Assembly: GCA_964199315.1 (NCBI GenBank)
Contig: OZ116708.1
Location: forward strand, 21,452,001-21,516,000
Reading direction: 5' to 3'
Length of the DNA stretch: 64,000 bases
DNA from: Orbicella franksi
Lineage: Eukaryota
Shown: piece after piece, positions 2,733 to 61,105 of the stretch
Layout of the letters: each line of letters begins with the position of its first letter
Numbering within the stretch: position 1 is the stretch's first letter
The notes under the pieces: generated by a model
What the model was told of the DNA's origin: nothing
Seen by the model: only the letters and a program-made list of their open reading frames with translations
The model's database searches: none
Program-made: the position numbers and the translations under genes

Positions 2733-5636
2733 TTACCCGCAAACTTTTAAGCATTGTATTACAGTAACTAACCAGCAGCGATACTTAGAATTGACAATCC
2801 TACAAATGCTCTTGAGAACAGGTTTACACTTCAGCGGGCAATCTGGTAAGAGACCTAGAACAACAATCAAAAGCTCAGTTAATTCGGAATGAGAGGGGAA
2901 AGGTAGTGAGTACATCACTGAATGAACTTGTATTTTTTTCTGTTGCATATTCTTTTCGTATTGTGCTCAAAATCTGCTGCAATCATTTCTGCTTTCTGCT
3001 CATTTAGTCAATTGATGCACAAAAACCGAAGACAAGTCTGACCCTTATGCGTATATGCGAGACCGATAACAATCGCCTTTTCCTAATCTATGAAAGAGAT
3101 AGATATCAAGTTCAGTGGGGATTTATGAGGCGTGCAATGTGAGGCGATGGTGAAAAACAGGGCGAACTCCAAAAGAAAATACAGATCAGATGTGAGGTCA
3201 GTGCGTTAAACGACAACGGCTACCATAGCTACTAATTTTTAAATTAATGTCAACCTAATGATGCACAGCATACTGATACCGGCTTTAAAAACTATGTAAT
3301 CTTAGCGTCGCTGATAATTTCCTTAACAGAGAAGGAAGATAGAGTTCAAAAACATGTACGCGTGTTTCACTTACCTCTTGCGGCTATTTTGCCCGTGGAT
3401 AAGCTTCTAGGTGCCCTATCTACCTTGACAACAAGATAAATGGGTAGCTCTGCACACAGATTCTTCATTTCGTCAATCAGATTGCCACGTGCATTGTCAT
3501 CAAGAGTCCCCACAGCCTCCAATTTCACTACAGGTGGACTTTTGTTCATCGTAAATCCCGCGTCGTTCTCCTAGTGGGATTAAATTAAAAAACTGACCCT
3601 CTGAACTACTGTACAGTCATGATAGTTATTACTGAAATTTCTAAAGACGACGCGGAACGTTTTGTGCAGAATCTCTAATCTGTAGGCATGACAAAGGAAA
3701 CAAGACTAGGTCTAGTTTAAATACACTATACGTATAAGGAAGCTGTTTTGCCAGTTCTATATTAAACCATGCTACTGTGTTAATACTATTGCACAACAGT
3801 GGATGTTTGCCTCATTGCCAAAGCTTCTGTTTAGAAATTGTTTCCAGTTCTCCCGCTAATATATTTTACCATGCGCGTTGCAGTAGATGTTTTTTTTGTT
3901 TGTTTGTTTGTTTGTTTTGTTCGATGATGTAAGCGGGATAAGCAATAACAAGTATTTCAGTTAATTTTCAATCATATTTCGAGTACCTTCAGTGTTAACA
4001 ATTCAGCACAACGAAACATGGGATACAAACTTACCAGAAGGCGCGCCAAGTCGGCCGGTTTAGGAACATTTTCAGTTGATGGACTCAGATAGCACGATTT
4101 GGCCTCTGGCATACGGATCATCATAAAATTCTGCAAAGTTCGAATGCATTAGTTATGTGCAAGTGCTGTCTGTATAAACGTAACGCTCCTATACTAAGAT
4201 AGCATGTCGCACACTCAGGTCATATGAATTTTGCCTTGAAGTTGAAGTAAAGTTATTTATCAAGGACCCATTTTGCACACCACTCAAAATGGCTTTAACT
4301 CCACATTTACTAGTCAACTGCTTCTTCCTTTACATGTAGTGTATACGAAGAGAACTCCTTGCTAAGCGAGGTGTTGTGCCTTGGATGTCGCTGAAAATAA
4401 TCTTTGGAAATAAGAACGAATGATAATAATAATAATCAATGAATCATATCTTTATACTAGCCCCGTACCCTCCCCTCTCCCTGAACAGGTCTTCCTACTT
4501 CTGATATTCGCCTCGACCCCGATAGCAAGTTATAAATTAGTGAATCGAACATGCAGTGCTCTAAAGTCACTAACCTTTTTAAAGTCAATGACCACGTCTG
4601 CCTCTTCTTTATCAGGCGAAATCTTTGGCACATGGAAAGTCTCTGTTTCCTTCTTTGTGTCAATTTCAACCTCTCCCTCTTCCTCTTTTCCATCTTCTGT
4701 CTTCAATTTTAATCTGTATTTCTTCACCGGATCACTAGCAGGTGAATCCTGCAAAGCCTGAAGAACGAAAAGGTATACCTGCATTTCAACTCATCTGATT
4801 ATACTGAGAGAGGATCAGGATAGCTTGGGTCCGAATTTGGTCGTCTTGAAAGTTCCATGAAAGTAAGCAATATTAGAAAGCAGGGAATTTCCTCTCAACT
4901 AATATTACACTGACACACATCGCTAAGCAAGTTTTAATCTGTAAGTCATGTGCTCTTGGATACGAACAAATACATCAAATGAAAACGCATGCGGCAGAGA
5001 AAGCAAATATCTGTTGTTATACTTCAACCGTTACCTTTTCCTCAGGTGAACCGCATTTACAGATTGACGAGGCAGACACAGCGACAATCGACAGAGCAAG
5101 GCACAAAATGAACAATTTGAAACCCTAAAGAGGAAAATTGGGTAAATGAACTTTTTTAAGTATCCTCTCTTATCAACTGAATTAGCGACTAAACGTTTTA
5201 CAGCGAGGATCCCGCGGCATGCAGCACAAGTGTGACCTCTTTTGGTCAATTCCCATTGTTTCGTGCAGATCATCCAATTAGAAGACAGGTTGCTTGAAGA
5301 AAAACAATTCAAAACCGCAAGTGATCGTGCGGGAAAGATTAAGTTCAAACTTTACAGTTTTAATTGTTAAATCGTACTCAAACCTAATTTGCAGCTCCAA
5401 AATGTGAAATGTTTACCACAAAATCAAATAAACAGGCATCTGCTTGACAGCCTATTTGCCCGGCAACAACTTAAAACTCAAGAAGTGATGAGAAATAATT
5501 TCTAGCGCCAGTATAAATGCATTCTTGCGTACTTTAACTCGAAAATACGACAAAATTTCTGGGTATATTTTGTTGTCTTGCTTTTGTGTATGGATCTAGC
5601 AGCAGACAAATGGCAAAATGAAAATAGACTTACCAT
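2733..5636 (-). CDS. Secreted BRICHOS-domain precursor with a C-terminal 6-Cys cationic beta-hairpin peptide (gene 1, 229 aa)
   Basis: Coding exons 5636-5634 (ATG), 5124-5035, 4757-4575, 4130-4035, 3570-3375 and 2854-2733. All introns are GT-AG with phases 0,0,0,0,1 and the frame is open throughout. Protein: MGFKLFILCLALSIVAVSA (signal-like) ... VVIDFKKNFMMIRMPEAKSCYL ... MKNLCAELPIYLV (BRICHOS Asp plus two Cys) ... RAPRSLSTGKIAAR-GLLPDCPLKCKPVLKSICRIVNSKYRCWLVTVIQCLKVCG*. Confidence 0.88.
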
Positions 5637-5720
5637 TTTTCTTTTGTGAAAAAGCGTCAAGTCTTCTTTCCTCTTGTAGCTGATGCAAAGTAGTATGGAT
5701 GCAGGTTCATATGAGCGAAC

Positions 5721-5814
5721 CCTTTTTATATCATCTGAAGGTTGTACAATGCCACCTCACTCCGGCTTAATCGGCTGATATCTGAAAATGTTACACCTAA
5801 ATTTGACCTGACCT
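5721..5814 (-). promoter_or_regulatory. Core promoter of BRICHOS gene 1 (TATA box and AGGTCAGGTCA motif)
   Basis: TATAAAAAGG at 5730-5721, ~90 nt upstream of the ATG, and AGGTCAGGTCA at 5814-5804. The same TATA is at 18443-18452 and 31186-31195, and in the inverted paralog at 9469-9477. Confidence 0.6.
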
Positions 5815-6079
5815 GGTTTCAGCACATTGGTGGCATAGTTGCTTCGCTATTTCTATGAAATTACAGGAAGTAGCGCTGAAACAGTGTGGCTATTTTCGAC
5901 CAAAGCTCGTATGCCAGGTGCCCTCGTTTCAGCACTTCCTTGAGACATGAATGGATAAAGCCTACCATGAATGCAAAAAGGCAAAAATAAAGATATCGTA
6001 TATCATAATAAGGATAAAGATAAATTGCCAGAGCCTTCAGCCGGTGAAACGTGTTGAAAGTCTCACTGAGAATTATCGC

Positions 6080-8760
6080 TGATTCAGTGTGAGAGGTCAT
6101 GTATGTTTGCGGTAAGCAAAAGATTTAGTTAAAATTACTAGGACTGACGGTTGCAAAGAGCTAAAAGGAGGACATATTAAAAAGAATGATACAGCAGTCT
6201 GAATATGAAAAATGCTCTGCTAGCAACTGTCCCAATGATCGTTCCTCCCTGTTTCCGTCATGATTTGAATACACTATTTAATATATGGGGAGTCACCGCA
6301 ATCTAGGCGGCGTACTGGTAGAATATCGGCCCGAGGTCTTGACAGTGCGGACCGAATGCATGGAGGTCGATACAAAAAAAAAAAAAGGAAAAAAAAACGG
6401 AAGGTCAATATTGTCCCAGTACGGTCCCGAGTATTATAGGTTAAGTAACAAGAGATTACAAGACTAAATATGTTTATATCAGTATATAAAAAAGTGCCAC
6501 TATCAGGGACTGTAAAAAAACGCGCAATTCTGATTGGGAGCCGACTAGGTGAAGGGAAAGAGAGTTGGAAGAAAAAGAAAAGGATTCTTTTTGTTTTTTT
6601 CAGGAACGTAAGCCATAAAACAAACAGCTTCAAGAGTGATCGCGTGGGCTTCAAGAGTGGTCACGCGGGATCATTCGGGACAGTGCCCGGTCCATTTACT
6701 GAGAGATCATTAGACCGGCGATAGAGCAATAGATTTTAGTTATTGGTCCTCTGAACTAACTTAGTCGTGTTACAAACTCATAAACAAATGACTGACAAGA
6801 ATTTGTGTTGTTGTTCCTTTGTTTTTTCCTGCTGATAGCGTGACATTTCAGATAAACAAGAAATCAGGTTAAAATACATAGGAAACAAAGAGGGAAATTC
6901 TAAACTTTTAAAACAGGTTTTCATTCAATTTTTAAGTCGCTAGATTTTTGGTATCTCTTGCTTATGATAAAGCTGACCTCTCACATTTTATGCATCAGAG
7001 ACACTTTACATATTTCATTCTTGAACGCTCCTTCTCAATATCATGATATAAGATATCTTTAGTTTTGCCCTTTTCGCGCTTCCTTTAGTTATGGTGCTAC
7101 TGCGCATCGCACAAACCTGAACTGAACACGTGTAGTCCAGTTCCTGAACCTCCACACTACCAGAGAACTTCCGGAGTAATAAAAATTGCAAAAAAAAAAA
7201 TCTTCTTCCCATAGGTCCTCTATTTTATGTCTCAAGTAAGGAGGGAACTGGGGAGAGCTAGCAGAGACGAGGTCTGATAGAGGAGAGCGAAACCGTTCCT
7301 GTAATTCTCTAGGAAATATCGAAGCAATTTTGCAAGTAATGCGCTGAAACAAGGTCAGGTCAAATTATAAGGAGTAACATTTCGTGATATCCGGTTAATA
7401 ATGTCTCTACTAGTGTACAGTGAACTTAGAGATTTAGGAACTTGACTATCAGCTCAAGTTTGTGCCATGCGCAGTAGTTCTACAACTGAAAAAAGTTCAA
7501 AAAGGGCAAAAAAAGACATCTCATATAATAACCAAAAAGAGGATATATTTAATACGGAAGCCATGAAGAGTCTGAAACGTGTCGTGGAAGTGTCTCCGAT
7601 GCAGTGTGAGAGGTCAGGTTTATTATAAGCAAAAGATACCAAAAACTAAGGTCAACTGACTTAAAAAATCACGATATAAAAGATTTCAAAGCTAACAAGC
7701 TTGTGGGGTCGTGTACTTCAAAACTACTAGAACTGCAGAAAGTGCTAATGCGAGGACATATTAAAAAGAATGGTACAGCAGTGAACATGAACAATACTCT
7801 GCTAGCATGGCGAAGTTCCTTCCTCTCCCCGGTTAAATTCACTATTTGATATATTTATTTACAAATGACTCAAGAGACATTTTCTTTCAACCCCTGACTG
7901 CGTGACATTTCAGATAGACAAAACGACAATGTGGCCAAATTAATGAGTGAACCCTTCGAGGCTGGAAGAAAAGATAAAAAGTTAAGACGAGTGAAATTCA
8001 AAACTTTTGAAGCAGTTTTTTATTCCGTGGGATGGCTCCGGCGTAAAAAGGACCAGGGAGCTCGTCGGAAATTTTGAAAAGAACCCCTAGGAGGTACCAA
8101 GATCCTGTTTTGCGAGCGTGGCTTGAAAAATTTTTTCACCCCTGAAGAGGTCACAGTTCCAAAACAACAAACTATTCGGCTAGTCACTGTTTTCGGCTCA
8201 ATGCCTTGAAAGGTACTGTCAGAGGCTCCCGCTGTGGAGCTTTTGAAAATACTGACCACTCTAAGAGGTGCCGAAACAGCTTTTTACGTGTTACAAAGCA
8301 CGACGAGTCCCACTGTTTTATTTTGTTTCAACTGTGTAGTCAACTGATCTGGGTTTTTGGTATCATTTAGCTTATAAGGAATAAACCTGACCTCACACAC
8401 TGCATCAGAGACCCTCCCATGACATGTTTCACTCTCGAAGGTCCCGGAAATTTATCCTCCTTCGCATTATAATGATATAGGAGATCTTTGTCTTTGCCCT
8501 TTTTGCACTTCCTTCAGTTATGGTTCTACTGCGCATCGCAAAAACCTGAGCTGAACACGTGTAGTCCAGTTCCTAAAGCGCCGCCACGGGGAAAAGAATG
8601 TCTAAGTCCAGGATTTTAACGGGAGCCGGAACTGGTTGTGTTATTCGCAGAACTACTATAACTGACGGAAGTGCTAATGCGAGGGCGTATTAAAAAAAAA
8701 AAAAAAAAAAAAAAATGGTACAGCAGTGAATATAAACAATACTCTGCCAGTAGAGTCGCC
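6080..8760. repeat. Nested diverged direct and inverted repeats between the head-to-head genes
   Basis: The block G(A/G)G..ACATATTAAAAA..TG.TACAGCAGT recurs at ~6165, ~7750 and ~8680. The motif GATGCAGTGTGAGAGGTCAGG (~7600) is inverted at ~8385-8410; related inverted copies lie at ~6085 and ~6970. Repeated in units 2 and 3. Confidence 0.65.
7341..7403 (+). promoter_or_regulatory. Orphan third copy of the upstream promoter module (no TATA or exon follows)
   Basis: GCGCTGAAACAAGGTCAGGTCAAATTATAAGGAGTAACATTTCGTGATATCCGGTTAATAATG closely matches 9379-9441 and the reverse complement of ~5775-5825. Confidence 0.5.
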
Positions 8761-9389
8761 GTGATCGTTCCGTGCTCTTTCCGGTCTTTCTATAGAAGAT
8801 CGAAGTGGTACCGGCTGTTGTTCAGACTAGTTGAAAAGTGTTCTGGGGGAGTCCAAGTGAAAAGTTAGGTTATACAACGGACATGGAAATGGATATGGAG
8901 ATGTGGCTAAGATCTACTGATCTCCGGAGACCAGTAATAAACATTGCCAAAATTTCACCTTTCTATTTTTGTTGCTGTTTTTGTAGCGTCACAATCAATC
9001 TGGCTGAATTAGTTAGGTCACCTCGTTCTTTCCCCCTTCTCTTGCCCCGGTTACCCAAATACCCCGGGGTCCGGGAAATCGTCTACTGTAAAGTAACCCT
9101 GCCGCAACAACTATCTCTTCTGAGACATGGAAATAAACCCAAAAAATGATGAATTCATTATTAACTGAGCAAGTGTTTGTCACTTTAAAAATCACATAAA
9201 TTTTCCCCTAAAACAATTCTTAATCCAGTACTGAAATTTTGGTTCTGACGCTTCCTGGTTTAGAATTTCTTTACAGTACGGTAGGCTTTGTGCATTTATG
9301 TAAGGAAGAAGTGCTGAAACGAGGACAGTATGCAGACAACCTTCGATCGACAAAAACGAAAGCAACTCTGCCAGCAATGCACTGAAACA

Positions 9390-10649
9390 AGGTCAGGTCA
9401 AATTATAAAGATTAACATTTCCTGATATCAGGTTAATAATGAAAAAACATTGTGCAACCTTCAGGTGATATAAAAAGGGTTCGCTCACATGAACCTGCAT
9501 TTATACTACTCATTTGCACAGCTACAAGAAGAAAGAAGACTTAACGCTTTTTCACGAGAGAAAAGTGGTAAGTTTAATTGTATTGGAAGATATTTTTATT
9601 TTTATGTGCTATTTGTGTGCTGGTAGATTCATAAACAATGTCGGTGTAAAAGTTCCAGGCGGCCTGTGTTTTGCTTTGGATAGAACAAAGTGTACTGATC
9701 GATCACATGCTTTGATTTTGAAGAGGAGAAAGGCCGGTTCCTATTTGTTTAAAATGTTTTTTCAAGATAGACGCACAAGTTTCCTCAATTTAAATTGTTA
9801 CCAAATGTACTTGCGTGACAGAAGTTTCCGAAACGTTTCTTTCGCGTTTCTAAGACTGACAATGTCCGTGAATGTATACTGATTTCACCTTTTAACATTT
9901 TGGATTTGCGAAATTAGTTTAGGCCAAAAACTGTAAATTTGGCTTGAAAGATTCAGTCACTATTAAGAGGGGTTGAATATAAGTAAGAATATCCACAAGA
10001 ATATTTTCAGCCTAAAATAGGAAAAAAAATAAGCCTTGGCCGGAAAAACAATATTCTTACAATAAAAAAGAGTGTAACTGGTTCAGGCTATAAAAAGGGC
10101 CCCGTCGGTGGTTCCCAATCGGCCATCAGCTCTCATCATGAACACAATTTTATAGCAAATTTTTAACTGAGCTTCTGTTTGTTGTTCTAGGTATCAAACG
10201 AGGCTGTTACAAGGTGTGCACAACTAGGATGAAAACCTGTTCTGCTGGCGCCATTCCGTAACAACGTGCTCAGAGAAATGCGAGAAATAAGCATCGTGTT
10301 TCCAACCAAGTGGTACTTGAGGGAATTAATAAGTACAAAGTGCTATATGATCGAGTCCAGTTTACAGTTTCCATTGATAATAACAGTTTGAAGTCAAGTA
10401 AAGTGATCAATATATTTCAAGTCGAGTTACAAAGCTTTATTTTATTATTATCATTTGTTGTTTTGTTTCAGCAAAGTAAGATTTTGTTACAATTTCAGTT
10501 ATTTTTAAATTACAACTCTTACAGTTTATTCCAACGTGACTAAGCATGTCAAAGTAAACTTGTCGATATTGGAATAGCAATAGCAAAGTTGTGATAAATT
10601 GTATGTGGCTTAATTACATGATTACAATTTTAAATGTAAATTTAATAAA
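9390..10649 (+). pseudogene. Internally deleted inverted paralog of the BRICHOS gene (unit 1)
   Basis: Retains AGGTCAGGTCA (9390), TATA (9469), exon 1 ending GTG|gtaagt (9565-9567; ATG lost), part of intron 1, the acceptor TAACTGAGCTT...GTTGTTCTAG, a frameshifted peptide exon (10191-10290) and a homologous 3' UTR with AATAAA (10644). The signal-peptide and BRICHOS exons are absent. Confidence 0.8.
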
Positions 10650-11310
10650 GTCTTTTAATGCAGAATGCTTCTTGTGTTTATCATGTGCGCTGTGCTGAAG
10701 TGTTTCGGAACGCGTTTTTGGGGCCCTCTTTCTGTGGGTTCAGAAAGGTTCATTCTGTTACTAAACCAAGAATAAGCGCCTGTAAACTGAACAAAACAAG
10801 TCATATAAGTTCCTCTTGGTAGTGTAGAATCCCAGAAGAAAGGACCTTTCCCCCTCCCCCCCCCCCCCCCCTTTATATTCTGCCCCTATCCTACACCTGT
10901 TCCCTTAGCCAGTCCTGTTTGGCGTGGATGCAGACCTTTCTCCGATATGTATAATAATGTGTATTTTTTCTTCTTTTCTTTTTCTTGTTTCTTTGAAGAA
11001 GCAGATCTTAGATAAGGTAGATTAGGGGGGTGTTTACTCATGCTGGTGTGGGTTCCATAGCAAAAATGACGGTGATTTCATACTGCATGTAAATGATTTC
11101 TTTCGTTTCACATGCAACTTGCTCATGAACTCATGTCACACCATCTTGAATTGAATTATCAAAAACTACACATACCCTAAACATCGAAGTTTTCCGAGAG
11201 CCTAATTTCAAACCGCAATAGGTGATCGTTCGTTGTTTTAACATGGTACTACTGCTAGTTTTTGTATGGTAATGAAAATCTCAGTAAAGCAGTTACAGAC
11301 GCTACAGTGG

Positions 11311-11596
11311 CAGAACTCGGGCAGGGAAATCACACGCAGGCATAACGCAAATAGGCATAACGCAAAGAGGCATAACGCAAAGAGGTATCACGCAAAGAGG
11401 CATAATGCAAAGAGGCATAATGCAAAGAGGCATAACGCAAAGAGGCATATAACGCAATGCAAGTAGGCAGAACGCAGTGACAGAACTCGGGCAGGGAAAT
11501 CACACGTAAGCATGACGCAAGTGGGCATAACGCAAAGACGGGCATAACGCAAGTAGGTAGAACGTTGTGACAGAACTCGGGCAAGAAAATCACACG
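11311..11596. repeat. 15-bp minisatellite GGCATAACGCAAAGA nested in three CAGAACTCGGGCA(G/A)G(G/A)AAATCACACG repeats
   Basis: The first array has 7 units here, 5 in unit 2 (24032-24287) and 6 in unit 3 (37066-37336). Confidence 0.9.
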
Positions 11597-11877
11597 ATTA
11601 TTACAACGTCATTGATTTCGAAAAGCACCGTCCAGATTAAAATGCACAGCCAGTGTTTTCAATTTCCTCCGGTTTGAAGAGCGTTTTCGAAATGCTCCAT
11701 TCTCGTGAAGGATTAATGTGGACGGAGCCGTAGAGGAGGACGGGGCGTTATTGATCCTTGCTGAGAAACTTAATAAACTGTAAAGCCGTGAACGAAGATC
11801 CTGCTTGATTTCGACGTTGGATCTCACAGGAGATCTCATCAGCCAAACTTGAAAAGTATAACGATGAGAAATCAGCC

Positions 11878-12673
11878 TTCCTTTTACTGGCAGCAACACC
11901 TCTTGAAATCTCAAGGGCAATTAATGATACCATTTTGCTGCTCAGATCACTGGGGTTTACGATCCATGGCACAAAATCTGTCACCACGCCTACCCAAGTA
12001 ATCAACTTTCTGGGATTTACCCTAAATTCTCAGAACATGACCATTTCTATGGTCACCGGGAAAGCAGACACTGATAAAATCCAAGTGTCACGTTTTTGTC
12101 ATGAGCGCCTTGCTCGGGAGATTGGGTAACCACTCCCTACGTTTACGACTTAAAATAAAGTTACCTTACCTTACCTTACATGCAAGAGCCAGTTTCAGTT
12201 AAAGAGGTGGCCTCTGTAGAGGGCCTCATGGTATGAGCTTTCTCAGGTGTGCAGTATGCACCTCTGTTCTATAGGTCTCTGGAAAATGACAAAACTGATG
12301 CCTTGAAATGCAATGGTCGGGACCCTGAAGGGCAAATGACCCTTTTACCTCCGTCCAAACAGGACCTGCTATGGTGGATTTCTAATGTTGACCAATACCC
12401 AAAAGCTATTACTCCACAACCCCCTGATATAACACTCATGACAGACAGCTTACTGAAAGGCTGGGGAGGGGTGATAGAGGGTCATACCAGGAATCTAAAT
12501 TCCACATTAATTACTTGGAGACAAAGGAAATTCTGTTAGCCCTGCAGTCCCTTTGCGACCATGTGCAACGTTGCCAAATAAAAGTGATTTGTGAAAATAC
12601 AACTGCCGTACTCCTTTATCCGCAATATAGGTGGTACGAAATCTATAGTTTGCAATGACATGACTAGAGAAAT
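11878..12673 (+). mobile_element. DIRS1-type (tyrosine-recombinase) retrotransposon remnant, RT/RNase H
   Basis: Frameshifted fragments LLRSLGFTIHGTKSVTTPTQVINFLGFTLNS (RT C-terminus), DLLWWISNV, LMTDSLLKGWGG (TDAS..GWG RNase H motif) and KVICENTTAV..IRNIGGTKS (DNTTAV motif), as in DIRS1-class pol proteins. Confidence 0.8.
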
Positions 12674-12830
12674 ACGGTCGAACCTTCGGTTGCGACCACC
12701 GTTCGTAATCGACCACTTCTCCTCAGCGACCAGTATTCCAAAAGACCAAAAGTTTCCAAGTCAACTCACTATATTTGAACCTCTTGTAAGCGACCACCTC
12801 TCGTAAGCGACCGCGACCACTTTTAGAGCT
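12674..12830. mobile_element. Short repeat/MITE fragment with GCGACCAC subrepeats, truncating the DIRS remnant
   Basis: Begins TAC(G/A)GTCGAACC exactly where RNase H homology stops and contains several (TAA)GCGACCAC motifs. Present in all three units. Confidence 0.5.
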
Positions 12831-12893
12831 AAAAGTTTTGTTTTTGCTCATGGATGACGTAGTCTTCCATGAGCTTAGAAGGCAGTCGAATGG

Positions 12894-12938
12894 CACTCAC
12901 TCACTCACTCACTCACCCACTCACTCACTCACTCACTC
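12894..12938. repeat. (CACT)n microsatellite
   Basis: About 11 near-perfect units here, shorter in unit 3 (38641-38676). The corresponding position in unit 2 is the N gap. Confidence 0.9.
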
Positions 12939-21300: not shown

Positions 21301-22116
21301 GCGCCGCCACGGGGAAAAGGATGTCTAAGTCCAGGATTTTAACGGGAGCCGGAACTGGTTGTGTTATTCGCAGAACTACTATAACTGACGGAAGTGCTAA
21401 TGCGAGGGCGTATTGAAAAAAAAAAAAAAAAAAAAAAAAAAATGGTACAGCAGTGAATATAAGCAATACTCTGCCAGTAGAGTCGCCGTGATCGTTCCGT
21501 GCTCTTTCCGGTCTTTCTATAGAAGATCGAAGTGGTACCGGCTGTTGTTCAGACTAGTTGAAAAGTGTTCCGGGGGAGTCCAAGTGAAAAGTTAGGTTAT
21601 ACAACGGACATGGAAATGGATATGGAGATGTGGCTAAGATCTACTGATCTCCGGAGACCAGTAATAAACATTGCCAAAATTTCACCTTTCTATTTTTGTT
21701 GCTGTTTTTGTAGCGTCACAATCAATCTGGCTGAATTAGTTAGGTCACCTCGTTCTTTCCCCCTTCTCTTGCCCCGGTTACCCAAATACCCCGGGGTCCG
21801 GGAAATCGTCTACTGTAAAGTAACCCTGCCGCAACAACTATCTCTTCTGGGACATGGAAATAAACCCAAAAAATGATGAATTCATTGCTAACTAAGCAAG
21901 CGTTTGTCACTTTAAAAATCACATAAATTTTCCCCTAAAACAATTCTTAATCCAGTACTGAAATTTTGGTTCTGACGCTTCCTGGTTTAGAATTTCTTTA
22001 CAGTACGGTAGGCTTTGTGCATTTATGTAAGGAAGAAGTGCTGAAACGAGGACAGTATGCAGACAACCTTCGATCGACAAAAACGAAAGCAACTCTGCCA
22101 GCAATGCACTGAAACA

Positions 22117-23376
22117 AGGTCAGGTCAAATTATAAAGATTAACATTTCCTGATATCAGGTTAATAATGAAAAAACATTGTGCAACCTTCAGGTGATATAA
22201 AAAGGGTTCGCTCACATGAACCTGCATTTATACTACTCATTTGCACAGCTACAAGAAGAAAGAAGACTTAACGCTTTTTCACGAGAGAAAAGTGGTAAGT
22301 TTAATTGTATTGGAAGATATTTTTATTTTTATGTGCTATTTGTGTGCTGGTAGATTCATAAACAATGTCAGTGTAAAAGTTCCAGGCGGCCTGTGTTTTG
22401 CTTTGGATAGAACAAAGTGTACTGATCGATCACATGCTTTGATTTTGAAGAGGAGAAAGGCCGGTTCCTATTTGTTTAAAATGTTTTTTCAAGATAGACG
22501 CACAAGTTTCCTCAATTTAAATTGTTACCAAATGTACTTGCGTGACAGAAGTTTCCGAAACGTTTCTTTCGCGTTTCTAAGACTGACAATGTCCGTGAAT
22601 GTATACTGATTTCACCTTTTAACATTTTGGATTTGCGAAATTAGTTTAGGCCAAAAACTGTAAATTTGGCTTGAAAGATTCAGTCACTATTAAGAGGGGT
22701 TGAATATAAGTAAGAATATCCACAAGAATATTTTCAGCCTAAAATAGGAAAAAAAATAAGCCTTGGCCGGAAAAACAATATTCTTACAATAAAAAAGAGT
22801 GTAACTGGTTCAGGCTATAAAAAGGGCCCCGTCGGTGGTTCCCAATCGGCCATCAGCTCTCATCATGAACACAATTTTATAGCAAATTTTTAACTGAGCT
22901 TCTGTTTGTTGTTCTAGGTATCAAACGAGGCTGTTACAAGGTGTGCACAACTAGGATGAAAACATGTTCTGCTGGCGCCATTCCGTAACAACGTGCTCAG
23001 AGAAATGCGAGAAATAAGCATCGTGTTTCCAACCAAGTGGTACTTGAGGGAATTAATAAGTACAAAGTGCTATATGATCGAGTCCAGTTTACAGTTTCCA
23101 TTGATAATAACAGTTTGAAGTCAAGTAAAGTGATCAATATATTTCAAGTCGAGTTACAAAGCTTTATTTTATTATTATCATTTGTTGTTTTGTTTCAGCA
23201 AAGTAAGATTTTGTTACAATTTCAGTTATTTTTAAATTACAACTCTTACAGTTTATTCCAACGTGACTAAGCATGTCAAAGTAAGCTTGTCGATACTGGA
23301 ATAGCAATAGCAAAGTTGTGATAAATTGCATGTGGCTTAATTACATGATTACAATTTTAAATGTAAATTTAATAAA
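22117..23376 (+). pseudogene. Internally deleted inverted BRICHOS paralog (unit 2)
   Basis: Same structure as 9390-10649. GTG at 22292-22294; frameshifted peptide exon at 22918-23017. Confidence 0.8.
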
Positions 23377-24568
23377 GTCTTTTAATGCAGAATGCTTCTT
23401 GTGTTTATCATGTGCGCTGTGCTGAAGTGTTTCGGAACGCGTTTTGGGGGCCCTCTTTCTGTAGGTTCAGAAAGGTTCATTCTGTTACTAAACCAAGAAT
23501 AAGCGCCTGTAAACTGAACAAAACAAGTCATATAAGTTCCTCTTGGTAGTGTAGAATCCCAGAAGAAAGGACCTTTCCCCCTCCCCCCCCCCTTTATATT
23601 CTGCCCCTACCCTACACCTGTTCCCTTAGCCAGTCCTGTTTGGCGTGGATGCAGACCTTTCTCCGATATGTATAATAATGTGTATTTTTTCTTCTTTTCT
23701 TTTTCTTGTTTCTTTGAAGAAGCAGATCTTAGATAAGGTAGATTAGGGGGGTGTTTACTCATGCTGGTGTGGGTTCCATAGCAAAAATGACGGTGATTTC
23801 ATACTGCATGTAAATGATTTCTTTCGTTTCACATGCAACTTGCTCATGAACTCATGTCACACCATCTTGAATTGAATTATCAAAAACTACACATACCCTA
23901 AACATCGAAGTTTTCCGAGAGCCTAATTTCAAACCGCAATAGGTGATCGTTCGTTGTTTTAACATGGTACTACTGCTAGTTTTTGTATGGTAATGAAAAT
24001 CTCAGTAAAGCAGTTACAGACGCTACAGTGGCAGAACTCGGGCAGGGAAATCACACGCAGGCATAACGCAAAGAGGCATAACGCAAAGAGGTATCATGCA
24101 AAGAGGCATAATGCAAAGAGGCATAACGCAAAGAGGCATATAACGCAATGCAAGTAGGCAGAACGCAGTGACAGAACTCGGGCAGGGAAATCACACGTAA
24201 GCATGACGCAAGTGGGCATAACGCAAAGACGGGCATAACGCAAGTAGGTAGAACGTTGTGACAGAACTCGGGCAAGAAAATCACACGATTATTACAACGT
24301 CATTGATTTCGAAAAGCACCGTCCAGATTAAAATGCACAGCCAGTGTTTTCAATTTCCTCCGGTTTGAAGAGCGTTTTCGAAATGCTCCATTCTCGTGAA
24401 GGATTAATGTGTACGGAGCCGTAGAGGAGGACGGGGCGTTATTGATCCTTGCTGAGAAACTTAATAAACTGTAAAGCCGTGAACGAAGATCCTGCTTGAT
24501 TTCGACGTTGGATCTCACAGGAGATCTCATCAGCCAAACTTGAAAAGTATAACGATGAGAAATCAGCC

Positions 24569-25364
24569 TTCCTTTTACTGGCAGCAACACCTCTTGAAAT
24601 CTCAAGGGCAATTAATGATACCATTTTGCTGCTCAGATCACTGGGGTTTACGATCCATGGCACAAAATCTGTCACCACGCCTACCCAAGTAATCAACTTT
24701 CTGGGATTTACCCTAAATTCTCAGAACATGACCATTTCTATGGTCACCGGGAAAGCAGACACTGATCAAATCCAAGTGTCACGTTTTTGTCATGAGCGCC
24801 TTGCTCGGGAGATTGGGTAACCACTCCCTACGTTTACGACTTAAAATAAAGTTACCTTACCTCACCTTACATGCAAGAGCCAGTTTCAGTTAAAGAGGTG
24901 GCCTCTGTAGAGGGCCTCATGGTATGAGCTTTCTCAGGTGTGCAGTATGCACCTCTGATCTATAGGTCTCTGGAAAATGACAAAACTGATGCCTTGAAAT
25001 GCAATGGTTGGGACCCTGAAGGGCATATGACCCTTTTACCTCCGTCCAAACAGGACCTGCTATGGTGGATTTCTAATGTTGACCAATACCCAAAAGCTAT
25101 TACTCCACAACCCCCTGATATAACACTCATGACAGACAGCTTACTGAAAGGCTGGGGAGGGGTGATAGAGGGTCATACCAGGAATCTAGATTCCACATTA
25201 ATTACTTGGAGACAAAGGAAATTCTGTTAGCCGTGCAGTCCCTTTGCGACCATGTGCAACGTTGCCAAATAAAAGTGATTTGTGAAAATACAACTGCCGT
25301 ACTCCTTTATCCGCAATATAGGTGGTACGAAATCTATAGTTTGCAATGACATGACTAGAGAAAT
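24569..25364 (+). mobile_element. DIRS1-type RT/RNase H remnant (unit 2 copy)
   Basis: ORFs 24626-24820 and 24940-25230 are near-identical to the unit 1 remnant. Confidence 0.8.
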
Positions 25365-25569
25365 ACGGTCGAACCTTCGGTTGCGACCACCGTTCGTAAT
25401 CGACCACTTCTCCTCAGCGACCAGTATTCCAAAATACCAAAAGTTTCCAAGTCAACTCACTATATTTGAACCTCTTGTAAGCGACCACCTCTCGTAAGCG
25501 ACCGCGACCACTTTAAGAGCTAAAAGTTTTGTTTTTGCTCATGGATGACGTAGTCTTCCATGAGCTTAG

Positions 25570-25700
25570 NNNNNNNNNNNNNNNNNNNNNNNNNNNNNNN
25601 NNNNNNNNNNNNNNNNNNNNNNNNNNNNNNNNNNNNNNNNNNNNNNNNNNNNNNNNNNNNNNNNNNNNNNNNNNNNNNNNNNNNNNNNNNNNNNNNNNNT
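25570..25700. other. Assembly gap or masked run (131 N)
   Basis: Replaces the 75-nt CACT-microsatellite segment seen at 12879-12953. Confidence 0.95.
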
Positions 25701-28295
25701 ATTCATTAAACCTGGATTAAACAATTATCTACTACTTCCCCTACTAAGTAATGTTTTTGTCCAAGAGTGTTCGGTCGTCTTGAAGAAGGTTTTTTGACGA
25801 AATAGAAGACGAGGGGAAGACGCGGGGGACTAGAAAGGCGTACATTTTTGCCCAAGAAATCGAGAGCCTGGGTGCGAGTTTGTCGGGCACCCTGAAGTCG
25901 GCCATTTTGGCTTCATGTGATTTTCTTTCGTAAATATGTTGTTTTTTGCCTATCGGCTTTTGCTCACACGTGGATGAAAGCTGGTAGAGGTATTTATGAC
26001 TGTGGTCATGTATCGGTCACAACAACGCGGTCGGCGAGGTCAAAGAATTGATACGAGAGACCCTGTAAGACAAAGTCAGAAAGTGGGATCGTGTTAACTT
26101 AGCATATGGGGCAAATTAAGCTCGTAGCTTTTTTTCTTGGCAAGAGAATTTGATGGTTTCCACTCGCTTTCTCTCCTTGTGGAGTCCAAGGTAAGCTTAA
26201 GTTCTTGTTGAGTTTTAGTTTCATTGTTTCTTTATTGTTTTATTTTGTAATAATAATGATAGTAATAATAAAGATCTTTCAACAGGGAGCCCACTTCACA
26301 TACATGTGGTTTTCAGTGGGGCCCTGCAAAAATAAAATTGCAAAAGCTAAAGAAATAGTAGATTAAAAATAATAATAAAATTTAACCATTGTACTAATAG
26401 AAATATAGAAAACAGAAAAAAAAATGGTAATTAAAAATTAAAAATTAAGAAATACCCCTAATTCGACGGAAGTTCGAAATTTGTACGTAGTAAGCTTATT
26501 TTAAAATACTTCAAGTAAGAAATTCGATTTGCCTCATCGTTTCGTTCTGTTGTCGTTCACACTACATTTCTTTTGTATTCCATGCAGTTTGACCAGCGTG
26601 GAAATTTCTTCACAGATGGTATGCGCGTCAACCTACATGTACGATCGAGTAAATACGAGCTATGTTGAAATATTTTAGTGATGGACGGACAAATTAAAGC
26701 AATTAAGTCCAAGAGACTGTGTAGATCTATTTTTTACAAGGGAGATATATGCTGTCCAATTGCATCAGGATGGGGGTGCTCGTCGTAACAGATAAATTGT
26801 GAGGGGTGGGTGAGGGGTGGAGGGGTAGTGTTTACCTGAATCATACCAGGATCATTGACTTTCACACCCGTATGAGTTCATCCTAGTTCCCTCCCCGGGG
26901 GTACTTTGATATAAAAGGGACGTGGGTGTCCTTCGGAAATTTTTGAAAAGAATTCCCAAGAGGTACCAAGATCCAATTTTGTGGGCGTGGGTTGAAATTT
27001 TTTCTTTCCTAAGAGGTACCAAATATTCTTAAACAACACATTAACTGACGATTGCTTCGAATACCCTCTATTCGTAAAGGTGATTATCAAATATTTCCTC
27101 ATATTTTGGGGGGCTTAATACCCTGCTCCTGCTGTGGACCTTTTGAAGCCGAACACCATAAGAGGTTGCGTGAATGAATTACATAGTTCAACTTGAATTA
27201 AGAAGTTTCCGCGTAGCCGGCTACAAAGAACTTAATTTGAGTGGCAGGGTACTCTGCAGTTGAACCGAAAGGTATAATAATATGAAATATCGTGGGATAT
27301 TAAATGGTATAGAACTCGCAGGCGTTGCGTAACTAGTTGCGTTCAGAGCTTGTAAGAAGTATAATTCCCCGCAATCTGCTTTTGGTTTTCTGTCTGTTTC
27401 CACTCAAAACTTTTTACAGAGAAGAAAAAAGATACACATTATTTTACAACTAAGCAAGAAATGATCTCGAAGAAAGGTCTGCGTGCACACCGAACAAGTT
27501 TGGCGACGAGCAATGATGTAGGGAAGGGGTAGAATCATACTGGAGAGAGGAGGGGGGAGGCCCTTTCTTCTGGGATTCTACAATACCAAGAGAAACTTAA
27601 AGGACTTGTTTTGCTCAGTTTATAGTTGGTCACTTCTGGGTTTTAGGGAACACCGAATTAACCTTTATGAACCTACAGAAGGAGACGGCAGGAAAAAATG
27701 GCTCCGAAACAGTCCTATATATAGACTCGATATATAGTGTAACACTTGGACACATTAGACATAGTAAGCAAAAAAAAAGCAATCGATTTGATGTGGCACA
27801 AAAAGAGGCTTTATTAACTTTGTTTAATTCAGTATTGGCTTTTAAATGGTAACTATCTAATTAAGACACTGACATACAATTAATTTATCACAACTTTGCT
27901 AAAGCTATTAGTTGCTATTGCATATCGACAAGCTCACTTAAACAAGTTTAGTCACGTTGAAATAATTTGAAAGAGTTGTCATTATAGAAAACTGAAATAA
28001 AATCTTACTTTTTTAAACCAAAAAATTAAAACAAATCTTTGTAGCGCGACTTAAAATGTATTGATCTGTTTGCTTGACTCCAAAGTTTTTATTAATAGCA
28101 AAACTGTAAACTGAACTCGATCATATAACGCCTAATTTCTACTGATTTTAGTCACTCAAAATCCACTTGGTTAAAAAAGAAAAGCCGAAAAAAAAAAAAG
28201 CTGGTTAAAGAAGAAAAGCCGGCTTGCCCTGCCAGCTTTTCTTCTTTCTGCCCTTTCTTTTTTTAACCCGGCATAAATTAGGGGGGCCCCCGCAC

Positions 28296-31101
28296 TTAAT
28301 CGCATTCGTTTGTGCATATTGTTTCGGTAACGGTATACTTGATTATCCAAAGTATAACAACAGTTTTCGTAACAGTTCTACACACTTCCTTACAGTGTCG
28401 TCTGATACCTAGAACAACAATCAAAAGCTCAGTTAATTCGGAATGAGAGGGCAAAGTGAGCGCATAGCTGATTGAACTTGTATTTTTTCGAATTGTGCTC
28501 AAAATCTGCTGCAATCATTTCTGCTCTTTCTGCTCATTTAGTCGATTGATGCACAAAAACAGAAGAAAACACTGACCCTTCTGCGTATATGTGAGACCGA
28601 TGACAATCGCCTTTTCCTAATCTATGAAAGAGATAGATATCAAGTGCAGCGGGGATTTATGAGGCGTGCAATGTGAGGCGATGGTGAAAAACAGGACGAA
28701 ATCCAAAAGAAAATACAAATCAGACATGAGGTCAACGGCTACCATAGCTATTAATTTTTAAATTAATGTCAATTTAATGATGCACAGCATACTGATGCCG
28801 GCTTTAAAAACTATGTAATCTTAGCGTCGCTGATAATTTCCTTAACAGAGAAGGAAGATAGAGTTGAAAAAAATGTACGCGTGTTTCACTTACGTTTTGC
28901 GGCTGCTTTGCCCGTGGTTAAGCTTCTCGGTTCCCTATCTACCTTGGCAACAAGATAAATGGGTAGCTCTGCACACAGATCCTTCATTTCGTCAATCAGA
29001 TTGCCACGTGCATTGTCATCAAGAGTCCCCACAGCCTCCAATTTCACTACAGGTGGACTTTTGTTCATCGTAAATCCCGCGTCGTTGTCCTAGTGGGATT
29101 AAATTAACAAACTGACCCTCTGAACTACTGTACAGTCATGATAGTTACTACTGAAATTTCTAAAGACGACGCGGAACGTTTTGTGCAGAATCTCTAATCT
29201 GTAGGCATGACAAAGGAAGCAAGACTAGATCTAGTTTAAATACACTATACATATAAGGAAGCTGTTTTGCCAGTTCTACATTAAACCATGCTACTGTGTT
29301 AATACTATTGCACAACAGTGGATGTTTGCCTCATGGCCAAAGCTTCTGTTTAGAAATTGTTTCCAGTTCTCCCGCTAATATATTTTACCACGCGCGTTGC
29401 CTAGAGATATTTTCTTCGATGATGTAAGAAGGATAAGTAATAACAGGTATTTCAGTTAATTTTCAATCTTATTTTGAGTACCTTGAATTTCAACAATTGA
29501 TCACAATGAAACATGGGATATAAACTTACCAGAAGGCGCGCCAAGTCGGCCGGTTTAGGAACATTTTCAGTTGATAGACTGAGATAGCACGATTTGGCCT
29601 CTGGCATACGGATCATCATAAAATTCTGCAAAGTTCGAATACATTAGTTATTTGAAAGCGTTGTATAAAGGTAACGCTTCTACACTAAGATAACATGTCA
29701 CACAGGTCATATGAATTTTGCCTTGAAATTGACCCATTTTGCACACTACTCAAAATGGCCTTAACCCATAAGCTAGTTAACTGCTTGTTCCTTTACACGT
29801 AGTGTACACGTCTTATTTCAATGTATATACGAAGAGAACTCCTTGCTAAGCGAAATGTTGTGCCTTGGATATCGCCGAAAATCTTTGGAAGTAATAACGA
29901 ATGAATGAATCATATCTTTATACTAGCCTCGTACCCTCCCCTTTCTCTGAACAGGTCTTCCTACTTCTGATATTCGCCTCGACCTCGATAGCAAGTTATA
30001 AATTAGTGAATCGAACATGCAGTGCTCTAAAGTCACTAACCTTTTTAAAGTCAATGACCACGTCTGCCTCTTCTTTATCAGGCGAAGTCTTTGGCACATG
30101 GAAAGTCTCTGTTTCCTTCTTTGTGTCAATTTCAACCTCTTCCTCTTCCTCTTTTCCATCTTCTGTCTTCAATTTTAATCTGTATTTCTTCACCGGATCA
30201 CTAGCAGGTGAATCCTGCAAAGCCTGAAGAACGAAAAGGTATACCTGCATTTCAACTCATCTGATTATACTGAGAGAGGATCAGGATAGCTTGGGTCCGA
30301 ATTTGGTCGTCTTGAAAGTTCCATGAAAGTAAGCAATATTAGAAAGCAGGGAATTTCCTCTCAACTAATATTACACTGACACACATCGCTAAGCAAGTTT
30401 TAATCTGTAAGTCATGTGCTCTTGGATACGAACAAATACATCAAATGAAAACGCATGCGGCAGAGAAAGCAAATATCTGTTGTTATACTTCAACCGTTAC
30501 CTTTTCCTCAGGTGAACCGCATTTGCAGATTGACGAGGCAGACACAGCGACAATCGACAGAGCAAGGCACAAAATGAACAATTTGAAACCCTAAAGAGGA
30601 AAATTAGGTAAATGAACTTTTTAAGTATCCTCTCTTATCAACTGAATTAGCGACTAAACGTTTTACAGCGAGGATCCCGCGGCATGCAGCACAAGTGTGA
30701 CCTCTTTTGGTCAATTCCCATTGTTTCGTGCAGATCATCCAATTAGAAGACAGGTTGCTTGAAGAAAAACAATTCAAAACCGCAAGTGATCGTGCGGGAA
30801 AGATTAAGTTCAAACTTTACAGTTTTAATTGTTAAATCGTACTCAAACCTAATTTGCAGCTCCAAAATGTGAAATGTTTACCACAAAATCAAATAAACAG
30901 GCATCTGCTTGACAGCCTATTTGCCCGGCAACAACTTAAAACTCAAGAAGTGATGAGAAATAATTTCTAGCGCCAGTATAAATGCATTCTTGCGTACTTT
31001 AACTCGAAAATACGACAAAATTTCTGGGTATATTTTGTTGTCTTGCTTTTGTGTATGGATCTAGCAGCAGACAAATGGCAAAATGAAAATAGACTTACCA
31101 T
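28296..31101 (-). CDS. Secreted BRICHOS-domain precursor (gene 3), same C-terminal peptide as gene 2
   Basis: Coding exons 31101-31099, 30590-30501, 30223-30041, 29625-29530, 29089-28894 and 28408-28296. Splice sites and frame are intact. Confidence 0.85.
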
Positions 31102-60846: not shown

Positions 60847-60870
60847 AGCGACATTAACACTATACGAACT

Positions 60871-61105
60871 ACAAAGATCAGTGATCGTTAGACATTGCAA
60901 AAAAAGTTTCGTTGGAGGATGAAGGGAGCTCTCTTTGTGAAGAGCAACAAGGATGAGAGCATTGCCCACTGATGCAGTAATGGACAGCAAAATGTTTAAG
61001 ATTGAAAGAAATACCCCTATTCCTGTTGGGATTGAGGATTTGCTTGCTTCGTTCAGCTCGATTGTGGTGTTTTCGGTTACAGTGAAGTTCGCCATTCTTG
61101 TTCAC
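60871..61105 (-). pseudogene. 5' fragment (TM1-TM2) of a paralog of the GPCR at 55493-56434
   Basis: [75 protein letters not shown]. Homology stops at 60871, 24 nt from the MITE. Confidence 0.9.

What the first reader, a model, noticed from the sequence alone, without database searches (positions are those of the whole stretch)
2733..31101. Tandem array of secreted BRICHOS + beta-hairpin peptide precursors: candidate cnidarian counterpart of the arenicin-type system
Seen: three intact spliced genes encode signal peptide, acidic/basic linker, BRICHOS-like domain (VVIDFKK..IRM..KSCYL...LCAELPIYLV, with the conserved Asp and Cys pair), basic processing sites and a single-exon Cys-symmetric peptide. 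Established: BRICHOS (ITM2B/Bri2, proSP-C, chondromodulin/tenomodulin, gastrokines) chaperones beta-prone client segments. Polychaete AMP precursors (preproarenicin, preproalvinellacin) have this same signal-BRICHOS-hairpin layout. Inference: this is a diversifying BRICHOS-chaperoned peptide-effector family in an anthozoan. From recall, the characterised coral AMPs (damicornin, AmAMP1) are ShK-like and not BRICHOS-linked, so this may be undescribed. I could not search the literature.
Basis: partly seen in the sequence, partly recalled or inferred. Interest (0 to 1): 0.92.

Follow-up and report, generated by a model that had tools for sequence, protein, structure and literature searches.

The report
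Coral BRICHOS hairpin-peptide precursor gene array
Three tandem coral genes each encode a secreted precursor in which a BRICHOS chaperone domain is followed by a disulfide-laddered beta-hairpin peptide on its own fast-changing exon; this is probably a host-defence peptide family, but a 2026 coral proteomics paper had already predicted it and nobody has tested its function.

Summary
Three minus-strand six-exon genes (229, 226 and 226 aa) lie in three 12.75-kb tandem units, and every intron is GT..AG. PolyA RNA contigs reproduce all five splice joints of gene 1, including exon 5 to exon 6.

Each protein has a signal peptide, an acidic proregion, a BRICHOS domain and a C-terminal Cys-symmetric peptide. 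I could not hand the spliced proteins to Pfam. The BRICHOS call therefore rests on:
- exon 4 alone (E 0.037);
- 70-72 % identical coral homologues that pass Pfam's cut-off;
- the conserved Asp and Cys pair;
- an AlphaFold model of a homologue whose 30 best Swiss-Prot fold matches are all BRICHOS proteins, arenicin-1 and -2 among them.

AlphaFold folds the window's own gene 2/3 peptide as a hairpin (pLDDT 90).

Caveats:
- Genes 2 and 3 encode identical proteins and are separated by the intergenic N gap, so copy number is uncertain.
- Their exon 5-6 joint was not seen in RNA.
- Gene 1 has only a single Arg as cleavage site.
- The gene 2/3 peptide is nearly neutral.

The "undescribed" claim fails. 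Coral BRICHOS genes were reported as heat-induced in 2017, and PMC12960093 (2026) predicted "PaBRI-AMP1/2" from the same family.

The scan's other notes on this stretch concern this same window; none is on other DNA.

Verdict: a new member of a known, so far only predicted, kind.

The parts
2733..5636 (-). Gene 1 (229 aa), six exons: 5636-5634, 5124-5035, 4757-4575, 4130-4035, 3570-3375, 2854-2733
   Evidence: Model from the sequence, all introns GT..AG. All five joints are present in polyA RNA contigs of run X3.
2733..2854 (-). Gene 1 exon 6: a 6-Cys peptide with spacing C-x3-C-x7-C-x8-C-x7-C-x3-C, net charge +6, terminal Gly
   Evidence: The three symmetric Cys pairs share one register (i+j constant). 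The six Cys fall on the six invariant family columns.
15553..18358 (-). Gene 2 (226 aa), six exons: 18358-18356, 17847-17758, 17480-17298, 16882-16787, 16346-16151, 15665-15553
   Evidence: Joints of introns 1-4 are seen in RNA contigs, but those contigs carry gene-1-type letters at 16833 and 16838. The exon 5-6 joint was not seen.
15553..15665 (-). Gene 2 exon 6: a 4-Cys peptide (C-x3-C-x21-C-x3-C) preceded by the K-R-I-R-R site
   Evidence: AlphaFold on this exon alone gives pLDDT 90.1, strands 5-18 and 22-35. Net charge 0 to +2.
28296..31101 (-). Gene 3 (226 aa, protein identical to gene 2), six exons: 31101-31099, 30590-30501, 30223-30041, 29625-29530, 29089-28894, 28408-28296
   Evidence: Exons are 100 % and introns 99.5-100 % identical to gene 2.
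2850..39577 (.). Three tandem units of about 12.75 kb, with boundaries near 15661 and 28404; the array ends near 39577
   Evidence: Self-BLAST and the mosaic identity profile.
10191..10290 (+). Orphan relic of a peptide exon in the opposite orientation. The acceptor is conserved. The first half (C-x3-C-x7-C) runs into a stop, and the second half (C-x7-C-x3-C) lies in another frame. Copies at 22918-23017 and 35954-36053.
   Evidence: No exons 1-5 lie upstream. The inverted 3' flank is seen at 10304-10974.
25570..25699 (.). Assembly gap, intergenic, between unit 2 and the start of the stretch that is 99.6 % identical to 12953-21357
   Evidence: Not filled.

Best explanation
These are paralogous genes for secreted prepropeptides of a stony-coral family.

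Proposed mechanism:
- A cleavable signal peptide sends the protein into the secretory pathway.
- A BRICHOS domain in a mildly acidic proregion acts as a built-in chaperone. It keeps the very beta-prone C-terminal segment from aggregating.
- A furin-type convertase cuts after the basic site (K-R-I-R-R in g2/g3, a single Arg in g1).
- A 33-40 residue beta-hairpin is released, pinned by two (g2/g3) or three (g1) rung-like disulfides. The terminal Gly of g1 is probably converted to an amide.
- The released hairpins are most likely host-defence (membrane-active, antimicrobial) effectors, used during stress and at settlement.

The peptide sits on its own exon, which is swapped or diverges as a cassette while the rest of the gene is kept nearly identical by recombination between units.

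Shown here: gene structure, splicing of g1, BRICHOS relationship, hairpin prediction, cassette divergence. Inferred: cleavage, amidation, chaperoning, antimicrobial activity.
For: Gene models and splicing.

BRICHOS relationship:
- Exon 4 alone has Pfam BRICHOS as its only hit (E 0.037, profile positions 14-45).
- Homologues 70-72 % identical to g1 over about 180 aa score 37-51 bits against a cut-off of 25.
- g1 and g2 carry D89, C105 and C163 at the invariant family columns and score 235-257 bits on the family profile.
- The family profile hits the human Bri2 BRICHOS chain 8rnu_A at E 2.5e-5.
- In the AlphaFold model of the Oculina homologue the BRICHOS part has pLDDT 88-94. It matches 8rnu and 2yad in PDB.
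- All 30 best Swiss-Prot fold matches are BRICHOS proteins, including arenicin-1 (E 2.6e-7) and arenicin-2.

Hairpin:
- The homologue's peptide is modelled as strands 193-208 and 213-228, pLDDT 85-92.
- The window's own g2/g3 peptide gives pLDDT 90.1.
- Cys positions keep a constant i+j register in 24 of 26 homologues, with 2-4 rungs.

Processing: the Arg before the peptide is invariant in 16 homologues. Many peptides end in Gly.

Cassette evolution: exon 6 is 56 % identical between g1 and g2 (shuffles 46 +/- 2.5). Intron 5 is 87 % identical and its last 42 bases are identical. One RNA contig shows a further exon-6 variant behind the same intron end.

Context from papers:
- BRICHOS AMP precursors of annelids (PMC11767717).
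- Coral BRICHOS genes induced up to 380-fold by heat (PMC5299404).
- Precursors of the same family detected only in settlers and predicted as AMPs (PMC12960093).
Against: - No activity has been measured for any coral member.
- The g2/g3 peptide is nearly neutral and very hydrophobic or Thr-rich, unlike classic cationic AMPs.
- g1 lacks a dibasic or R-x-x-R site.
- The reported induction is by heat and at metamorphosis, not by infection.
- The full spliced proteins of this window could not be handed to Pfam or to a signal-peptide predictor. BRICHOS membership of the window's own proteins therefore rests on one exon, on alignment and on close homologues.
- The full-length fold model is of a homologue, not of these proteins.
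- Mature, spliced g2/g3 mRNA was not demonstrated.
Confidence: 0.6

Rival explanations
1. The useful product is the secreted BRICHOS chaperone itself, as part of a heat and proteotoxic-stress response. The C-terminal hairpin would be only a built-in client or lid that is discarded.
For: Coral BRICHOS genes are among the most heat-induced genes and were read as chaperones (PMC5299404; PMC8590396). The BRICHOS part is the conserved part of the family.
Against: - The six-Cys ladder and the preceding Arg are invariant across genera.
- The peptide has its own exon with cassette-like turnover.
- Many peptides end in Gly and are strongly cationic. These are marks of a released product, not of a disposable lid.
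Confidence: 0.12
2. The released hairpins, at least the neutral Thr/Val/Ile-rich g2/g3 type, are not antibiotics. They would be self-assembling or surface-binding beta peptides (adhesive, matrix or mineral-associated material, or signalling peptides) needed at settlement. That would explain why an anti-amyloid chaperone is attached.
For: - The g2/g3 peptide has net charge 0 to +2 and a long confident hairpin.
- Similar T-x-T-x-T cores occur in Oculina and Montipora homologues.
- Family members were detected only in settlers (PMC12960093).
Against: Most family peptides are cationic, +4 to +18, like known hairpin AMPs. Nothing links these proteins to skeleton or adhesive. Thr, Val and Ile are simply the best strand formers.
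Confidence: 0.18
3. Only two genes are real. Unit 3 would be the other haplotype of unit 2, placed in tandem by scaffolding across the gap.
For: A stretch 99.6 % identical to 12953-21357 starts exactly at the right edge of the gap. The g2 and g3 proteins are identical.
Against: - Beyond 34.1 kb, unit 3 is only 94-98 % identical to unit 2, while units 1 and 2 are 99-100 % identical there.
- Near-identity between neighbours is thus a general, mosaic feature of the array.
- In run X3 the unspliced g2-type exon-6 contig has about twice the word depth of the intron contigs (9.6 against 4.5-5.6). The tool warns that depth is no copy number, so this is weak.
Confidence: 0.25
4. The peptides are venom or prey-directed toxins made in gland cells or stinging cells.
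For: The layout resembles many cnidarian toxin precursors: disulfide-rich secreted peptides with a propeptide, a basic cleavage site and a hypervariable mature exon (my own knowledge).
Against: No Pfam or fold match to any toxin family. BRICHOS is not known in venom precursors. Expression reports concern stress and settlement.
Confidence: 0.05

Closest known systems
Annelid BRICHOS-related AMP precursors (preproarenicin, preproalvinellacin, capitellacin, abarenicin, HfBRI-25)
   Same: Signal peptide, BRICHOS in the proregion, a basic cleavage site and a C-terminal disulfide-pinned beta-hairpin. The fold model of the coral homologue aligns with arenicin-1 and -2 over the BRICHOS part and the tail.
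   Different: - Different phylum, and only about 14-15 % identity in the fold alignment.
- The coral hairpins are 29-49 residues with 2-4 disulfide rungs, against 20-25 residues and 1-2 disulfides for capitellacin, alvinellacin and HfBRI-25 (the arenicin length is my own knowledge).
- No activity data exist for the coral peptides.
- The coral peptide lies on its own exon in tandem gene arrays.
'PaBRI-AMP1/2' of Pocillopora acuta (CAH3125467.1, XP_058945786.1; PMC12960093, 2026)
   Same: Same coral family. The stretch equivalent to exon 4 is 20/32 identical to g1. Same layout, with KR then a Cys-rich hairpin, and predicted as AMPs.
   Different: Another genus and other paralogues. Their peptides were described with two disulfides. 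They were only predicted (AMP Scanner) and detected as precursors by proteomics. That paper gives no genomic organisation and does not state the family-wide Cys-ladder rule.
ITM2B/Bri2 and ITM2C
   Same: BRICHOS followed by a convertase site and a short C-terminal peptide with a disulfide loop (my own knowledge). Best solved-structure match by sequence profile and by fold.
   Different: Bri2 is a type II membrane protein with no cleaved signal peptide, and its peptide has one disulfide. It is a single conserved gene, not a diversifying array.
Gastrokine-1 and -2
   Same: Small secreted protein with a signal peptide and a BRICHOS domain. Highest TM-scores in the fold search (0.49/0.60). InterPro files the Pocillopora homologue under the Gastrokine family.
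   Different: Gastrokines have no released Cys-ladder hairpin, and the fold alignment stops at residue 196 of the coral model, before the hairpin.

Membership tests
BRICHOS domain (Pfam PF04089) | Profile match above Pfam's gathering score | tested here: inconclusive
Exon 4 alone gives 14.7 bits, E 0.037, as its only hit. Homologues 70-72 % identical score 37-51 bits against a cut-off of 25.
BRICHOS domain (Pfam PF04089) | Conserved Asp and a pair of Cys | tested here: met
   D89, C105 and C163 of g1 and g2 fall on the invariant columns D87, C103 and C160 of the 16-sequence alignment.
BRICHOS domain (Pfam PF04089) | BRICHOS fold | tested here: met
   Tested on the Oculina homologue only. PDB: 8rnu_A at E 1.6e-3 and 2yad at TM 0.62-0.65 by target. 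The 30 best Swiss-Prot models are all BRICHOS proteins, E 4e-8 to 2e-6.
BRICHOS-related AMP precursors (arenicin type) | N-terminal signal peptide | tested here: met
   By inspection: M-G-F-K, then a 14-residue hydrophobic core (mean Kyte-Doolittle 2.85), then V-S-A-S-S. No signal-peptide predictor was available.
BRICHOS-related AMP precursors (arenicin type) | Basic cleavage site between the proregion and the C-terminal peptide | tested here: inconclusive
   g2/g3 have K-R-I-R-R, which fits R-x-R-R. g1 has a single Arg (K-I-A-A-R). The Arg column is invariant in 16 homologues. Cleavage itself was not tested.
BRICHOS-related AMP precursors (arenicin type) | C-terminal disulfide-stabilised beta-hairpin | tested here: met
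   Prediction only: AlphaFold pLDDT 90.1 for the window's g2/g3 peptide and 85-92 for the homologue's peptide. The Cys register is constant.
BRICHOS-related AMP precursors (arenicin type) | Cationic, amphipathic mature peptide | tested here: inconclusive
   g1 is +6. g2/g3 are 0 to +2. Most homologues are +4 to +18, a few are neutral.
BRICHOS-related AMP precursors (arenicin type) | Measured antimicrobial activity of the released peptide | not testable with these tools
   No paper found reports an assay of any coral member.
Coral BRICHOS hairpin family ('PaBRI-AMP' type) | Full-length homology to named coral members, with the six-Cys ladder columns | tested here: met
   g1 and g2 score 235-257 bits on the family profile, end to end. 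Identity to Oculina, Desmophyllum, Porites, Pocillopora, Stylophora and Montipora proteins is 37-72 %. 63 % identity to CAH3125467.1 over exon 4. g2/g3 lack the middle Cys pair.

The most novel reading that the evidence does not exclude
The neutral, Thr-laddered g2/g3-type hairpins may not be antibiotics at all. They could be self-assembling or lattice-binding beta peptides: a flat T-x-T-x-T array next to the disulfide rungs on one face, and hydrophobic residues on the other. They would be used as extracellular material, or to bind surfaces, at settlement or under stress. BRICHOS would then serve as a true anti-amyloid escort for a functional amyloid outside vertebrates.
Probability: 0.12. Interest if true: 0.8.

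Novelty: new member of a known kind. Interest (0 to 1): 0.5.

Why it matters
- Corals have few characterised immune effectors. Their BRICHOS genes have been a puzzle since they turned up as some of the most heat-induced transcripts (PMC5299404).
- Reading them as precursors of released hairpin peptides gives that response a concrete, testable product.
- This locus adds what the 2026 prediction lacked:
  - verified exon structure;
  - the peptide on its own cassette exon;
  - tandem units with mosaic homogenisation;
  - a relic exon;
  - a simple family rule (2-4 disulfide rungs in one register) that defines peptides ready for synthesis.
- If the peptides are active, they would be the first BRICHOS-linked defence peptides outside annelids among the literature searched, and unusually long, multi-rung hairpins.

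Tried and rejected
- Pfam on single exons. Only exon 4 gave BRICHOS; exons 3, 5 and 6 gave chance-level hits (Membrane_bind, LcrV, SAMD1_WH), which I ignored.
- Getting a reference for the window's own full-length protein. It was absent from all three word-index searches and from the representative search. I therefore did not run Pfam, a signal-peptide check or a full-length fold on the window's own proteins, and I did not type the long sequence.
- P0004 (1728 aa, bacterial beta-propeller with a Por secretion tail) from the representative search was rejected as a spurious match.
- Two exact-pattern scans of JGI metagenome contigs found nothing: one for the g2 exon 5-6 joint, one for the shared exon 3-4 joint.
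- Raw-read runs X23 and X24 of the same species label held almost nothing of gene 1.
- dN/dS of the prepro part between g1 and g2 is about 1, but rests on only 13 changed codons, so I draw no selection claim from it.
- A helical-hairpin reading of the C-x3-C motifs was considered. I rejected it because all Cys spacings place the Cys on one strand face, and because both AlphaFold models give strands.
- One broad literature query was too loose and added nothing.


Full report
**What is there**

Self-comparison shows three tandem units of about 12.75 kb, from 2850 to about 39577.

From the sequence I built three six-exon genes whose ends coincide with the finding's coordinates: g1 2733-5636 (229 aa), g2 15553-18358 (226 aa) and g3 28296-31101 (226 aa). 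All fifteen introns are GT..AG. Exon 1 holds only the ATG. The g2 and g3 proteins are identical. tblastn finds no further copy in the window.

**The gap**

The N run at 25570-25699 is intergenic. It lies 2.6 kb below the g3 stop and 7.2 kb above the g2 ATG, so no reading frame depends on it. Its flanks are collinear with the other two units, where the corresponding flanks lie 74 and 66 bases apart. I did not fill it.

It matters in another way. A stretch 99.6 % identical to 12953-21357 begins exactly at its right edge, so unit 3 could be a haplotype copy placed in tandem.

Against that stands a three-way alignment of the units, which shows a mosaic:
- Gene 3' half: unit 1 differs from units 2 and 3 (78-94 %), while units 2 and 3 are 99.6-100 % alike.
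- Gene 5' half plus 3 kb upstream: all three units are 99.4-100 % alike.
- The rest: units 1 and 2 are 99-100 % alike, and unit 3 differs (94-98 %).

Near-identity of neighbours is therefore a general feature of the array. That fits unequal crossing-over or gene conversion. The copy number is still not proven.

**Transcription**

PolyA RNA contigs of run X3 show all five g1 joints at the predicted bases, with CT..AC ends on the plus strand. They include the exon 5-exon 6 joint 3375|2854.

For g2, joints of introns 1-4 appear. The contigs that show them carry the g1-type letters at 16833 and 16838, so they probably come from g1-type transcripts.

The g2/g3-specific exon 5-6 joint was not seen. 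The only contig over g2 exon 6 runs 26 bases into the intron. Exact-pattern scans of JGI contigs found neither joint. Words of g2 exon 6 plus its 3' UTR are held by several polyA libraries, which does not show splicing.

One contig of run X4 continues from the same intron end and the first eleven exon bases into a different exon 6 that again encodes a C-x3-C motif. This points to more cassette variants in the population.

**BRICHOS**

The evidence is therefore indirect but consistent:
- Exon 4 alone has Pfam BRICHOS as its only hit (E 0.037, profile positions 14-45 of 91).
- A representative search with exon 5, followed by word-index searches, found a family whose named members are all stony corals: Stylophora, Pocillopora, Oculina, Desmophyllum, Porites and Montipora.
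- The closest full-length homologues are 70-72 % identical to g1 over about 180 residues. They pass Pfam BRICHOS at 37-51 bits against a cut-off of 25.
- In a 16-sequence alignment the BRICHOS Asp and Cys pair are invariant. g1 and g2 carry D89, C105 and C163 in those columns and score 235-257 bits end to end on the family profile.
- The family profile finds the human Bri2 BRICHOS chain 8rnu_A at E 2.5e-5.
- An AlphaFold model of the Oculina homologue P0036 has mean pLDDT 73.7, with the BRICHOS part at 88-94. It matches 8rnu and 2yad in PDB.
- In Swiss-Prot models its 30 best hits are all BRICHOS proteins: chondromodulin, ITM2B/C, gastrokines, tenomodulin, arenicin-1 (E 2.6e-7) and arenicin-2.
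- The ESM Atlas places it next to two cnidarian BRICHOS clusters and gastrokine-2.

**The peptide**

Across genera the C-terminal peptide keeps six invariant Cys, spaced C-x3-C-x7-C ... C-x7-C-x3-C, after an invariant Arg. Other members have four or eight Cys.

In 24 of 26 homologues the Cys positions obey one register (constant i+j), as expected for rungs across an antiparallel hairpin. Most peptides are cationic (+4 to +18) and many end in Gly.

g1 fits the six-Cys rule, has net charge +6 and a terminal Gly. g2/g3 have lost the middle pair and have net charge 0 to +2.

AlphaFold gives a long hairpin for the homologue (strands 193-208 and 213-228, pLDDT 85-92). For the window's own g2/g3 exon-6 peptide folded alone it gives pLDDT 90.1, strands 5-18 and 22-35, with the turn where the register predicts it.

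In g2/g3, Thr 11, 13 and 15 pair with Thr 29, 27 and 25 on the face that also carries the disulfides.

**Evolution of the locus**

- Between g1 and g2, exons 1-4 are 98-100 % and exon 5 is 95 % identical.
- Intron 5 is 87 % identical, with its last 42 bases identical.
- Exon 6 is 56 % identical (shuffles 46 +/- 2.5), and the next 150 bases are 50 % identical.
- Identity recovers to 81 % further downstream.

The break sits exactly at the acceptor. This fits cassette replacement, or old divergence of the peptide exon with homogenisation of the rest, better than local point mutation.

Each unit also holds, on the other strand, an orphan relic of a peptide exon (10191-10290, 22918-23017, 35954-36053). 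It has the same acceptor. Its first half (C-x3-C-x7-C) ends in a stop, and its second half (C-x7-C-x3-C) is in another frame. No upstream exons are present.

**Mechanism**

Best reading: a secreted prepropeptide in which BRICHOS escorts a strongly strand-forming tail. A convertase then cuts at the basic site, g1 is amidated, and a disulfide-laddered hairpin is released for host defence.

Gene structure, g1 splicing, BRICHOS kinship, the hairpin prediction and cassette divergence are shown here. Cleavage, amidation, chaperoning and antimicrobial action are inferred from the annelid precedents and from general BRICHOS biology.

Weak points are the single-Arg site of g1, the near-neutral g2/g3 peptide, and expression reports that concern heat and metamorphosis rather than infection.

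**Prior knowledge**

- BRICHOS-linked AMPs are characterised only in annelids (PMC11767717; PMC13001179).
- For corals, Maor-Landaw et al. 2017 found BRICHOS genes induced up to 380-fold by heat in Stylophora. They collected 238 coral BRICHOS domains and left the function open (PMC5299404).
- Montipora capitata shows the same induction (PMC8590396).
- A February 2026 proteomics paper on Pocillopora acuta detected two family members only in settlers. In a supplementary figure it predicted KR cleavage and Cys-rich hairpin AMPs, 'PaBRI-AMP1/2' (PMC12960093).
- One of those sequences is 20/32 identical to g1 across exon 4.

So the idea is published, as a prediction. What this locus adds is the genomic anatomy and the ladder rule.

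**Verdict**

The novelty claim is not: this is a new member of a known, so far only predicted, kind. Interest is moderate, mainly because the peptides are now well enough defined to be synthesised and tested.

Noticed in passing
window 10191-10290 (+); also 22918-23017 and 35954-36053: Orphan relic of a peptide exon in inverted orientation in every unit. The acceptor is conserved and the six-Cys ladder is split by a frame break and a stop. No upstream exons are present.
   Followed up: yes
window 2083-39577: Mosaic identity between the three units. The gene 3' half sets unit 1 apart, the distal half sets unit 3 apart, and the gene 5' half plus 3 kb upstream is 99.4-100 % identical in all three. 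This suggests recurrent unequal crossing-over or gene conversion.
   Followed up: partly
window 15655 (run X4 contig): An RNA-library contig shares the end of intron 5 and the first 11 bases of g2 exon 6. It then continues into a different exon 6 that also encodes a C-x3-C motif, so it is a further allele or paralogue not in this assembly.
   Followed up: no
window 49985-51076, 55493-56434, 60730-61095 (-): Single-exon rhodopsin-family GPCR ORFs in tandem downstream of the array (Pfam 7tm_1, E 1e-25 and 1e-24). The third is a fragment. DNA repeats at 56204-57557 and 60871-62531 show they are duplicates.
   Followed up: partly
P0010, P0013, P0014 (Stylophora, Pocillopora meandrina): Some family members carry two BRICHOS modules in tandem before an acidic tail and a basic site (Pfam: two stretches, 78.5 bits for P0010). 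The gene models are marked partial.
   Followed up: no
g1/g2/g3 residues 23-25 (window 5058-5066 in g1): A C-x-C motif right after the predicted signal cleavage site is conserved in most homologues. Its partner Cys or role is unknown.
   Followed up: no
model of P0036, residues about 40-110: The strands ahead of and into the BRICHOS domain give weak fold matches to ependymin-related and LolA-like proteins (PDB 6jld, E 0.05, rmsd 3.5 over 75 residues). The Atlas also lists ependymin clusters at low score.
   Followed up: no
window 984-1556 (+): A 190-aa ORF with no Pfam match, at the window's start.
   Followed up: no
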